64,000 nucleotides of DNA, from assembly GCA_965113315.1 (NCBI GenBank), contig OZ220363.1. One strand, written 5' to 3'. The translations under genes were made by a program, and so were the position numbers. Source of the DNA: Podarcis vaucheri. Taxonomy: Eukaryota. Of the stretch, positions 2,926 to 5,900 are shown one piece after another (the first letter of the stretch is position 1; every line of letters starts with the position of its first letter). The notes beneath the pieces are model-generated. The model was not told the DNA's origin, did not search any database, and saw nothing but the letters and a program-made list of their open reading frames with translations.

Positions 2926-5900
2926 GTAAGTAACCGTTTTAAGATAACCTCAATCTTATAAAGCAGTTTTAATTCTTCCCATTATAAATGCAACTTCCAT
3001 TATCTGAATGTCAGTTTGAAAGGTCCAGGGGTTTTTTGTGTGTGAGTGTGTATGTGTGCAAATTAAATATTTAGCAAAACCGGTTTACTGTTTTAAATGC
3101 CTTTAAAAATCCTAAGTTAATTATATTTATTGTAATTTTATGTTATGTTGGCTGGGATCCAAATATCCATTAACAGAGCTGTGCTCATGGAAGTGGGGGA
3201 GGCAAATTTCTGATTTCTTGTGCCCACTAGAAATCCACACTCCTACACCCCAGTAGTGTAGGACATTGTGTAGGTGCTGCATGCAGTGAAGAAACTGGCA
3301 AAAATTCTACCAGCAGGAACTTTCACAGTATTGCAGCTACTTCTGCAAACACTCAGTGCCAGGTGGCATCCCGTTTTGCCACCTGAGGCAAAATGGGAAT
3401 GTACCATTCCCTGACCTCTCGCCATGCCCCCCTCCACTGTTGCCAGGTGCCCCCCTCTTGCCAAACTCGACAAGAACCAGAGCACTCCTCAAGGTGTTTC
3501 TGCTTGTCTTCTGTACCCTGGGTGGGTGGAGGAGGTGATGGGGGACATTCTGCTGGAAGAGGAAGCAGTGGGGCAGGTGGGTTCTTCACCCTGCCTCATC
3601 AGTGGGCAGGCTCTGCAAAGTGCTTTCCCATGAACTGAAGTACTCCTTCAACTTACTGAAGGGCTGGTCTTGATCCTGTCTACTGTTGTTTGTTGTCTCT
3701 GGTGCACTTATATACAAATAGAATAAATTAATAAATAATTCACCTACTTCTTAGTTCCAATAGTTCTTGTGGTTATAAATATTTTACTAGGATATGACAG
3801 TGATGTCACAAGAGAAAATGAAATTAATTACACCATCAAAGCCTTATCAACCAACATCAGACCTATGTTTGGAATCAAGCCTCATCTGCAGCTAAAAGAG
3901 CCTTCAGTTGATGAAAGGTAACTTGGGGAGGAAATGTGAAATTTTATGGCATACTGTAATAGATAGAATTTTAAGGGGCATGTGTGTGTAAAAGGGGCTG
4001 AGATTTTTTTCCTATTTGGTTTTGAACCATTGTGCTTGAATATTGGATAGTATTTCCATTTAACTTTTCATGGACTAAGAATGTTGGCCAAGAGTAAAAG
4101 ATTTTCACATGTAGTAGTAAATAACACACATACACTGCTGCTGAACACCAGTAGTAGCAAACAAATAGTCAGTGATAGCTTTGATCCTCTGTTGTTGGGA
4201 CAAGGGTGCATGGAATAATACTTCCTCACTGCCACCACCACCAGGTGATCAGTGCTATTAAAGCGGACAGCACTAACACTCATGCAGTGCTAGATGTACT
4301 CCCTCCTCCCCGCTATACTGTGATCTTGTGTAAATGCAGGCAATAGTTAACATGTGCAAATTCAATGTTCATTGTTTAAATAATGCAAATTAAAAGCACG
4401 GAAGGAGGATAACTTAAAAACTCTTTTGTGCAGGGTTTTACCTATGCGGGAAGAGCTTTTAAGTCTCAGACTTGCTTACTGAGCTCTCGGAGGCTCTTGC
4501 GAAATCTTGGACAACCCTGCAAATTTTGCAAGAGCCTCCCCAAGCCCAGTAAGTTCCCTGCCTTGCTGGGCAAAGAACGCTAAGACCCATTTGGGTGCAC
4601 TGGCTTGGGGAGGTAATATTGCTCATGCAGGGGCAGTTCAAAGAAGCTGGCTCAAATATATCCAGTTTTGTGTATATGTGCCTTCCCCGGAATGTAATCC
4701 TTGATCCGAGTTACCTGTATACCAGAACTGCAGGCAGGCAGGCAGGCACTGAGATATTTGAAGATTTGAAAGGTAGGGTTAAACAATAATTTTAATAATT
4801 GCCAAATCTCAGCTATCTGCCAATCTCACATTCCCACCACCCTTCTGAGAAATACCCCTCCCCACCTTCTCACTATATAGAAGGATCTGGCAACTTCTGT
4901 TTCAGTGTATCTGAAGAAGTGTGCATGCACACGAAAGCTCATACCAAGAACTAACTTAGTTGGTCTTTAAGGTGCTACTGGAAGGGATTTTTTTATTTTA
5001 ATTTTCGAAGTGTACGCAAGAGGCATCTTCAGTCCTTGCATCTAAGTGGGCATGTTTAATTCTGCAGCTTTAAATATTTGTGGGCAAATTTTCACTTAAC
5101 ATTTTGAACTGTGGTTGAACTGAAGCAAACATGCATGCCAGATCCATCTTTTGGAAAACAGTCAGAAGTGACATCCCGGAAAAGAATATTCCTCTGCTTA
5201 CAAATATTTTACAGAGACATGCACTGAATTTTACACACAAATGCCTTTAGACTTGATGCATTTACTGTATTTCGTTCTTGGGTATTAATGCCTATATACG
5301 AAATGTGAGTTTAGAATCGGCTAACAAATATTTGGTCCATTGAATTAATTTCAGTTTTCTTTATCCTAGATTTCTGATATATATTGTTCATATTTTAATA
5401 TTCCTGCTTAATTTTTATGCTTCCTGTGAAGGCAAGGGGTTGTAAGGTAAGATCTTACTTACATATATAAAACATTCACTATAAAGTATATTTTATCTGA
5501 TTTGGAAAATTATAACCTACAGAAGCGTCAAGTAATACATATATAGATAAAATCCTAGGGAATACAATGATGCAATGAATATACCATATTCTTCTGTCTA
5601 TAAGACTCTTCCATGTATAAGACACCCCCTATTTTGGGGGGACTCAGATTTAAGAAAATGTATCTGTGTAGAAGACACCCCCTAATTTTTGACATTAGTT
5701 TTTAGGGGGAAAACCTAGTCTTATACATGGAAAAATACGGTACTTCCTTTTTGCTATTGGAAAGTTTCTAGAGCAATCAAATGAGGCTGATAAAAACAGA
5801 AAAGATACATTCTTCTGATGGCAGTTTTTGTGTCCATGAATCTACATACCTTATACATCTTCTGTGAGCCATAAAGGGTATAGCTTCTAGCTCAGCACCA

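What the first reader, a model, noticed from the sequence alone, without database searches (positions are those of the whole stretch)
4907..4944. Intact minimal hammerhead ribozyme motif in sense orientation within an EML5 intron
Seen: GTAT CTGAAGA A GTGTGC AT GCACAC GAAA GC TC ATAC. It has the full hammerhead core (CUGAnGA, GAAA, UC cleavage site after 4940), a 4-bp stem I, a self-complementary stem II, and a stem III reduced to the palindrome AGCU. Established: Penelope-like retroelements carry such minimal type-I hammerheads in their pseudo-LTRs, and these are thought to cleave efficiently only as dimers through the palindromic stem III. Inference: this copy is transcribed as part of the EML5 pre-mRNA about 490 nt upstream of the 15-nt microexon, so a dispersed latent ribozyme family could act on host pre-mRNAs in cis or in trans.
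Basis: partly seen in the sequence, partly recalled or inferred. Interest (0 to 1): 0.8.

Follow-up and report, generated by a model that had tools for sequence, protein, structure and literature searches.

The report
Penelope-type hammerhead in young intronic insertion
The small self-cutting-RNA motif is real, but it is the standard hammerhead carried by an extremely abundant Penelope-type lizard retroelement, here in a young 192-base insertion in an EML gene intron, and nothing shows that it cuts the host transcript.

Summary
It fits every published hallmark of the minimal hammerheads (min-HHR) of Penelope-like elements (PLE). My structural descriptor found 2 copies in the window and none in 300 shuffles. 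No Rfam hammerhead model detects it.

It is not a stand-alone feature. It lies in a 192-nt insertion (4807-4998) that two related species lack at the same site. Summed depth over the hammerhead part is 10^4-10^5 times the single-copy depth. Two further loci in the window are fold-back pairs with target-site duplications. Their longer arms carry the optional ~42-nt tail with an AC-rich motif that is published as a PLE signature.

The gene is a + strand EML5/EML6-type gene, so the motif is intronic and sense. No second sense copy lies nearby to form the dimer that such ribozymes need. The only other sense copy is 28.5 kb away and has a dead core. Published work reports little or no monomer cleavage, protein-assisted cleavage in Anolis, and no RNA-seq ends at the cut.

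Only contigs were available here, so RNA ends were untestable. This scan already holds 239 hammerhead notes for this genome. Verdict: a known kind, of low interest.

The parts
4807..4998 (+). 192-nt insertion: a 5'-truncated, tail-less copy of a very abundant Penelope-type retroelement end, absent at the orthologous site in two related species
   Evidence: table 5: single-copy contigs of X8 (1016 nt) and X12 (1019 nt) join 4806 to 4999, with 255 or more letters on each side. Table 2: depth rises 10^4-10^5-fold inside these bounds. Table 7: other copies continue 5' of 4807 with a shared sequence (agreement 0.85).
4807..4906 (+). Part of the element upstream of the hammerhead (pLTR-like); holds a TATA-like hexamer (4874-4879) and an acceptor-like TTCTGTTTCAG (4895-4905)
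   Evidence: table 8: many contigs from other copies bridge 4906/4907. Any function of these two motifs is inferred, not tested.
4907..4944 (+). Minimal type-I hammerhead motif: stem I 4907-4910/4941-4944, core 4911-4917, extra A 4918, helix II 4919-4932, GAA 4933-4935, palindrome AGCT 4936-4939, C17 4940 (predicted cut 4940|4941)
   Evidence: Features compared with PMC4209133.
4945..4998 (+). Conserved 3' region of the element, ending in a T-rich run at the tail-less 3' end
   Evidence: 98-99% identical to the arms at 33317-33410 and 33432-33523. Genome-wide copy ends pile up at 4982 and 4999 (table 7).
33317..33410 (-). Tail-less arm of a fold-back copy, with an intact hammerhead (33369-33410, 6-bp stem I)
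33432..33567 (+). Longer arm of the same fold-back copy: hammerhead with G12>A (33435-33464) plus a ~42-nt tail (33524-33567) holding CCAACAC 72 nt after the cut. The whole copy (33317-33567) is flanked by the duplication CTTAGTGGGCG and sits inside an L2-like RT remnant
59190..59406 (-). Older fold-back copy (88-93% identical) flanked by the duplication TTTGTAAAG. The minus arm has the tail and a hammerhead truncated within helix II. The short plus arm starts at the base equivalent to the predicted cut site
3791..3917 (+). Upstream host exon (EML inter-domain linker); donor AG|GTAACT at 3917|3918
   Evidence: table 8: a 2820-nt contig of X19 covers 3790-3918 and stops at the exon edge. for the splice sites. 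for neighbouring EML propeller exons on the + strand.
5432..5446 (+).
   Evidence: No RNA contig covered it.

Best explanation
The motif is the minimal hammerhead that every copy of one very abundant Penelope-type lizard retroelement end carries. Here it sits in a 192-nt insertion (4807-4998) that is 5'-truncated and tail-less. The insertion entered an AT-rich spot of an intron of an EML5/EML6-type gene, in sense orientation, after this lineage split from two relatives that differ by about 1%. The hammerhead belongs to the element's own life cycle. It would process multimeric or tandem element transcripts, through a double hammerhead formed by the palindromic AGCU and with help from the element's protein. 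Reverse transcription would start downstream at an AC-rich site, which gives 3' ends with or without a ~40-nt tail. As a lone monomer in the intron this copy is most likely catalytically silent and neutral for the host. Shown here: the motif, the family, the insertion bounds and its absence in relatives, the tail dimorphism, and the gene and strand. Inferred from literature: the dimer and protein requirement, the role in the element's cycle, and inactivity as a monomer. Whether the source is an autonomous PLE or an ORF-less derivative mobilised by one is unresolved.
For: Motif and chance. All four non-descriptor hallmarks listed in PMC4209133 are present: an extra nt between positions 9 and 10.1, G10.1-C11.1, a long helix II with a short helix I, and palindromic 15.x-16.x. 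Family: five arms at three loci in the window, 88-99% identical. Summed depth is 6.2 million against about 90 in X8 and 2.2 million against about 20 in X12, with less depth over the 5' part, which is the usual truncation gradient. Young insertion: the 4806>4999 joint in single-copy contigs of two other species. PLE signatures: a tail present on one arm and absent on the other and in this copy; loose ends behind 4999 read GTTTTGACTA(C/T)GG; CCAACAC lies 72 nt after the cut. The published Anolis Poseidon element has an optional 30-40 bp tail and an AC-rich RT start about 85 nt after its cut, and the same hammerhead layout across its tandem junction. Within 4907-4944 only two positions vary in at least 10% of the laid depth: 4932 C>T, which keeps a G-U pair, and 4940 C>T, which is still a cleavable H17. 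The flank 4946-4967 varies by up to about 50% (table 3). No cis partner.
Against: No RT or GIY-YIG frame lies in the window, so linkage to a PLE ORF rests on literature and on unverified scan notes. The frame opening at the ATG in loop II closes after 9 codons, unlike Poseidon_Ac, where the ORF starts in the hammerhead. The family may therefore be ORF-less. Rfam finds no hammerhead. The family is too uniform for helix covariation to be tested. Depth ratios from contigs are not copy numbers. Silence of this copy is inferred, not measured.
Confidence: 0.88

Rival explanations
1. The intact sense copy does cut the EML pre-mRNA at 4940|4941 at a meaningful rate. It would do so by pairing in trans with other sense copies in nuclear RNA, or with help from PLE protein, and would lower host expression or change use of the downstream microexon.
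For: The core is intact and the insertion is young. Many RNA-like contigs carry copies of the family, so partners may exist (tables 2 and 8). Anolis PLE protein assists hammerhead cleavage. Retrozyme copies are depleted from introns in Xenopus, which hints at a cost.
Against: Min-HHR monomers are inactive and dimers weak in vitro. No RNA-seq ends were seen at the cut site in Anolis. The double hammerhead scores -11.1 kcal/mol, against -13.6 for two monomers and -30.6 for a non-productive helix-II duplex. The only sense partner in the window is 28.5 kb away, beyond several exons, and has G12>A. About 44% of Xenopus retrozyme copies are intronic anyway.
Confidence: 0.05
2. The part of the insertion that matters to the host is not the ribozyme but the sequence just upstream. 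An acceptor-like TTCTGTTTCAG (4895-4905) or a TATA-like box (4874-4879) could create a cryptic exon or an intronic transcription start in sense orientation.
For: The motifs are present. Genome-wide, many copies break at 4905-4908 with diverse AT-rich flanks (table 7), as expected if element RNAs start or are spliced there. In Drosophila virilis Penelope an intron ends at the 5' end of helix I. PLTRs hold promoters.
Against: No joint from 3917/3918 to 4906 was seen, and there was no RNA cover of the unique flanks. The motifs are short and common. A cryptic exon would carry stop codons. This is inference only.
Confidence: 0.05
3. The family is a non-LTR retrozyme, that is a small ORF-less unit copied through circular RNA, and this copy is a monomer offspring rather than a truncated autonomous PLE.
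For: No ORF follows the hammerhead. Copies are very short and very numerous. Reptile retrozyme units average 176 bp, and retrozymes are proposed to derive from PLE pLTRs.
Against: There is no head-to-tail tandem in the window; the copies are solo or fold-back. Other copies continue 5' of 4807, so the unit is longer than 192 nt. The start and end of the insertion share no clear overlap of the kind a circular template would give (best local match 12 nt). CircRNA is untested. This rival concerns the source element and is compatible with the main explanation.
Confidence: 0.3
4. It is a chance match to a short degenerate descriptor.
For: Rfam is silent. The monomer fold is not unusually stable.
Against: 0 of 300 shuffles gave a hit against 2 observed. 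There are identical copies elsewhere and a huge family. None of 19 chance matches to the sequence pattern in metagenomes has helices I and II.
Confidence: 0.01

Closest known systems
Minimal hammerheads (min-HHR) in the pseudo-LTRs of Penelope-like elements (Cervera & de la Pena 2014, PMC4209133)
   Same: Type-I layout, a CUGANGA...GAAA core, one unpaired base after A9, G10.1-C11.1, a long helix II, a 4-6 bp helix I, and no helix III apart from a palindrome at 15.x-16.x. Also the massive dispersed copy number, mostly single truncated copies, some in opposite strands 100-700 bp apart. The paper reports them in reptiles (turtle, snakes).
   Different: This sequence family (helix II GUGUGC/GCACAC, AGCU) was not compared letter by letter with published ones, because no supplement was readable. 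No ORF is linked to it within the window.
Poseidon_Ac (PAc) of Anolis carolinensis: hammerhead, AC-rich RT start and optional tail (PMC11167929)
   Same: A hammerhead with one extra base and a 4-nt palindrome before the cut. An AC-rich motif lies about 72-85 nt downstream. Two alternative 3' ends differ by a 30-40 nt tail. The insertion targets are AT-rich.
   Different: The sequence is different (CUGAGGA-U...GAAACGUC). In PAc the ORF starts inside the hammerhead, whereas here the matching frame stops after 9 codons. The short copies here are fold-backs or solo fragments.
Non-LTR retrozymes of animals (PMC7229834; preprint 10.64898/2026.07.22.740005)
   Same: Small ORF-less repeats with type-I hammerheads that need a neighbour copy. 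They are proposed to derive from PLE pLTRs, and monomer copies are scattered, including in introns.
   Different: Retrozymes are defined by head-to-tail tandems and unit-length circular RNA. Neither is seen here, and the hammerheads described there are mostly the classical type with loop-loop contacts.
Double hammerhead of avocado sunblotch viroid and newt satellite RNA (Forster et al. 1988, as cited in PMC6765202)
   Same: A weak helix III is compensated by pairing two copies through a palindromic helix III.
   Different: Those RNAs are made as tandem multimers, so the partner is in cis. This intronic copy has none.
Conserved intronic hammerheads of amniotes (Rfam HH9/HH10; cited in PMC7229834)
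   Same: A hammerhead in sense orientation inside an intron of a host gene.
   Different: Those are single-copy, conserved across amniotes, complete as monomers and detected by Rfam. This one is a species-specific repeat copy, incomplete as a monomer and missed by Rfam.

Membership tests
PLE minimal hammerhead (min-HHR) | Hammerhead catalytic core: C3-U4-G5-A6-N7-G8-A9, G12-A13-A14, A15.1-U16.1, H17 | tested here: met
   CTGAAGA 4911-4917, GAA 4933-4935, A4936/T4939, C4940.
PLE minimal hammerhead (min-HHR) | One unpaired nucleotide between A9 and G10.1, and a G10.1-C11.1 pair | tested here: met
   A4918; G4919-C4932. Feature list from PMC4209133.
PLE minimal hammerhead (min-HHR) | Long helix II, short helix I, type-I topology | tested here: met
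   Helix II is 5-6 bp and helix I is 4 bp here (6 bp in the copy at 33369-33410).
PLE minimal hammerhead (min-HHR) | No stable helix III; palindromic 15.x-16.x that allows a dimer | tested here: met
   AGCT 4936-4939. The dimer structure can be drawn without a pseudoknot, but the energy model does not favour it.
PLE minimal hammerhead (min-HHR) | Families of copies with covariation or compensatory changes in the helices | tested here: inconclusive
   Copies are 88-99% identical. The only common variants in the motif are C11.1>U (G-U kept) and C17>U. No change on both sides of a pair was available.
PLE minimal hammerhead (min-HHR) | Self-cleavage at H17, as a dimer or with protein | not testable with these tools
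   Only contigs were on offer, which give no RNA ends. In vitro work is needed.
Penelope-like element (insertion of its end) | Optional 30-40 bp tail at the 3' end, and an AC-rich RT start site downstream of the hammerhead | tested here: met
   Tail at 33524-33567 and on the minus arm at 59190-59235. It is absent from the partner arms and from 4807-4998. CCAACAC lies 72 nt after the cut. Definition from PMC11167929.
Penelope-like element (insertion of its end) | 5' truncation, inverted 5' pieces, variable target duplications, AT-rich targets | tested here: met
   Depth gradient and shared sequence 5' of 4807. Fold-backs with 11-nt and 9-nt duplications. Target AATAATTGCCAAA|TAATTTT without a duplication.
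Penelope-like element (insertion of its end) | Linked ORF with an RT and a GIY-YIG endonuclease in full-length copies | not testable with these tools
   None in the window. The rest of the genome cannot be read. Scan notes of RT/GIY-YIG copies elsewhere are unverified.
Non-LTR retrozyme | Head-to-tail tandem units, each with a hammerhead | tested here: not met
   There is no direct tandem at any of the three loci.
Non-LTR retrozyme | Unit-length circular RNA | not testable with these tools
   No raw RNA reads were available.
Rfam hammerhead families (type I, type III, HH9, HH10, II) | Score at or near the family's gathering threshold | tested here: not met
   No hammerhead hit at E<=10 on 901 nt or on 71 nt.

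The most novel reading that the evidence does not exclude
The 192-nt insertion is present here and absent in two species about 1% diverged, so it offers a natural test of whether an intact sense PLE hammerhead affects a host pre-mRNA. The same test would cover the acceptor-like and TATA-like sequence just upstream of it. The most novel reading not excluded is low-level cleavage, assisted by PLE protein or by trans-dimers, at 4940|4941. This would lie 492 nt before a 15-nt microexon and could measurably change EML transcript yield or microexon use.
Probability: 0.05. Interest if true: 0.6.

Novelty: already known. Interest (0 to 1): 0.13.

Why it matters
As it stands this is routine repeat annotation. 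Minimal hammerheads are a published, massively dispersed feature of Penelope-like elements, reptiles included. With tens of thousands of copies, intact sense copies in introns are expected by the thousand. The modest value lies in three things. The insertion bounds are exact and its absence in close relatives is documented. The tail/no-tail 3' ends and the AC-rich motif reported for Anolis recur in a different hammerhead family. And a presence/absence contrast exists that could be used to ask whether such copies cost the host anything.

Tried and rejected
This is uninformative, because min-HHRs lack helix III and the loops the models expect.

(2) Metagenome scan for independent copies with free helix II: 19 matches, all chance. 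None has helices I and II and none resembles the repeat. It serves only as a negative control.

(3) RNA ends at 4940/4941: the run search returned only Logan contigs. The possible RNA runs covered exon 3790-3918 and repeat copies from elsewhere, not the unique intron. This is no evidence either way.

(4) Helix covariation: the family is too uniform.

(5) Reptile min-HHR sequences from the 2014 paper: no supplement is held. My string searches of the Anolis supplements failed because of GenBank spacing, so I read that file directly instead.

(6) PLE ORFs in the window: none. The RT remnants at 32.8-33.3 kb and 47.6-48.1 kb are L2-like by their YADD and LNPDKTE motifs.

(7) Overlap between the start and end of the insertion, as a circular template would give: only a 12-nt weak match.

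Copies were only compared. The EML5 versus EML6 paralog was not resolved, and the large protein searches were not used because nothing rested on them.

Full report
OBSERVATION.
- Stem I is GTAT (4907-4910) with ATAC (4941-4944).
- The core CTGAAGA is 4911-4917, followed by one unpaired A at 4918.
- Helix II is GTGTGC/GCACAC (4919-4932). When folded it has five pairs and a CAUG loop.
- GAA is 4933-4935 and the palindrome AGCT is 4936-4939.
- C17 is at 4940, so the predicted cut lies between 4940 and 4941.

I wrote a descriptor for such a minimal hammerhead. It found two intact copies in the window, this one and 33369-33410 on the minus strand. It found none in 300 dinucleotide-preserving shuffles of the window. 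A plain sequence pattern gave 4 matches against 0.5 expected. The monomer is no more stable than shuffled sequence. Neither result argues against the motif, because it has no helix III of its own.

WHAT IT IS PART OF. The motif opens a repeat unit of about 92 nt, which recurs at 33317-33410 (-), 33432-33523 (+) and, more diverged, around 59190-59406. Laying contigs of four public runs on 3650-5650 gave four results.
- In two other species (coded D and F), about 1% different in the unique flanks, one single-copy contig each joins 4806 directly to 4999. The insertion in this genome is therefore 192 nt, 4807-4998. It is younger than that split, or less likely was deleted in both relatives.
- Summed depth over 4923-4989 is 6.2 million against about 90 for the flanks in one run, and 2.2 million against about 20 in the other. 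This is not a copy number, but it indicates tens of thousands of copies.
- The upstream 100 nt (4807-4906) are repeated too, at lower depth. Many contigs from other copies bridge 4906/4907, and other copies continue 5' of 4807 with a shared sequence. The window copy is therefore a 5'-truncated piece of a longer element.
- Copy ends pile up at 4905-4908 on the 5' side, and at 4982 and 4999 on the 3' side. Behind 4999 the loose letters read GTTTTGACTA(C/T)GG.

That last sequence begins a ~42-nt extension found on one arm of each fold-back copy in the window (33524-33567, and the minus arm at 59190-59235). It is missing from the partner arms and from the copy at 4807-4998. Both fold-back copies have target-site duplications, CTTAGTGGGCG and TTTGTAAAG. 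The first sits inside an L2-like reverse-transcriptase remnant.

COMPARISON WITH PUBLISHED WORK. Cervera and de la Pena (PMC4209133) described minimal hammerheads in the pseudo-LTRs of Penelope-like elements. [quoted passage not shown] All are present here. They also reported massive numbers of mostly single, truncated copies, pairs on opposite strands 100-700 bp apart, and related motifs in turtles and snakes. They found no cleavage by a single motif and only weak cleavage by dimers.

The Anolis study (PMC11167929) showed four relevant things. PLE reverse transcription starts inside the RNA at an AC-rich stem-loop. An optional 30-40 bp tail marks PLE insertions. The hammerhead cleaved only when the PLE protein was present. 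No RNA-seq reads began or ended at the cut.

I read the Poseidon_Ac entry in that paper's File S1. Across its tandem junction it has the same layout with different letters: CUGAGGA, one extra U, helix II, GAAACGUC. ACAACAC lies about 85 nt after its cut. Here CCAACAC lies 72 nt after the cut. Unlike Poseidon_Ac, the frame that opens at the ATG in loop II here closes after nine codons. The abundant family may therefore be an ORF-less derivative. A 2026 preprint argues that animal retrozymes are such derivatives of PLE pLTRs, and gives 176 bp as the mean unit length in reptiles. No head-to-tail tandem is present in the window, so I do not file it as a retrozyme.

HOST CONTEXT. Pfam places the end of an EML second beta-propeller at about 2691-2930. 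It places successive parts of an EML first propeller at 17020-19525. All are on the + strand. The gene therefore has more than one TAPE domain, as EML5 and EML6 do; I did not resolve which paralog it is. A spliced contig covers 3790-3918 and stops at the exon edge, where the donor is AG|GTAACT. The 15-nt candidate microexon at 5432-5446 has AG and GT flanks, but its use was not shown.

DOES IT ACT ON THE HOST RNA? Nothing here says so, and several points speak against it.
- The copy is a lone monomer.
- The only other sense copy in the window is 28.5 kb downstream, beyond several exons, and its core is dead through G12>A. In a double hammerhead such a partner could only offer its own cut site to the intact core. 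It could not cut at 4940.
- The energy model puts the catalytic double hammerhead at -11.1 kcal/mol. Two free monomers score -13.6, and a non-productive duplex through the palindromic helix II scores -30.6. The model ignores tertiary contacts.
- The published activity data point the same way.
- RNA ends could not be examined. Only contigs were offered, and the possible RNA runs did not cover the unique intron.

CONSERVATION. Within 4907-4944 only two positions vary in at least a tenth of the laid depth. One is 4932 C>T, a CpG transition that keeps a G-U pair. The other is 4940 C>T, still a cleavable H17. Positions 4946-4967 vary by up to about half (table 3). This fits selection on the RNA motif in source copies. 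However, contigs and a likeness filter shape these figures, and no compensatory change on both sides of a pair was available. Covariation therefore remains untested.

VERDICT. The idea of action on the EML pre-mRNA is unsupported. The kind is already known. This scan already holds 239 notes mentioning hammerheads in this genome, and several follow-ups reached the same reading. I used those notes only as leads.

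Noticed in passing
window 59322-59323: In the fold-back copy at 59190-59406 the short inverted arm begins at the base equivalent to 4940/4941, the predicted hammerhead cut. A local GTATAC palindrome blurs the junction by about 2 nt. An earlier scan note reports one similar junction elsewhere in this genome. Genome-wide the best-supported 5' breaks are at 4905-4908, not at the cut.
   Followed up: partly
window 4872-4906: Just upstream of the hammerhead the insertion carries a TATA-like hexamer (4874-4879, about 30 nt before 4907) and an acceptor-like TTCTGTTTCAG (4895-4905). 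Many genomic copies start at 4905-4908 with diverse AT-rich flanks. Position 4906/7 may therefore be the element's transcript start or a 3' splice site. In sense orientation it might act as a cryptic acceptor or promoter in the EML intron.
   Followed up: partly
window 33317-33523: The two arms of the fold-back copy are about 92 nt long, 98.9% identical and about 20 nt apart, so the EML pre-mRNA would hold a long near-perfect hairpin. The spacer repeats ACTTATCTGAAGA twice. The minus-strand arm is also complementary to the sense copy at 4907-4998, 28 kb upstream.
   Followed up: partly
window 4770: Both related species carry 21 extra letters behind 4770 (AGGATGGAATTTTTGAGA(C/A)GT) that this genome lacks. 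This is a separate small indel in the same intron (table 4).
   Followed up: no
window 5593-5760: An unrelated very deep repeat starts near 5593 (depth about 10^3 times the flanks). It has inverted ends of the type tataagacaccccc ... gggggaaaacctagtcttata and looks like a MITE. It has no second copy in the window.
   Followed up: partly
window 32806-33316 and 33568-33900; 47645-48460: These are L2-like reverse-transcriptase remnants (YADD, LNPDKTE motifs) on the + strand. The first is split by the fold-back hammerhead copy, which dates that copy as younger than the L2.
   Followed up: partly
window 4932-4933: The only CpG in the motif spans C11.1 and G12. C>T is common among copies and keeps a G-U pair. 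The mirror change G>A, which kills G12, is below 10% of laid depth yet is the very change seen in the copy at 33435-33464. The asymmetry fits selection on source RNAs, or simply subfamily structure.
   Followed up: partly
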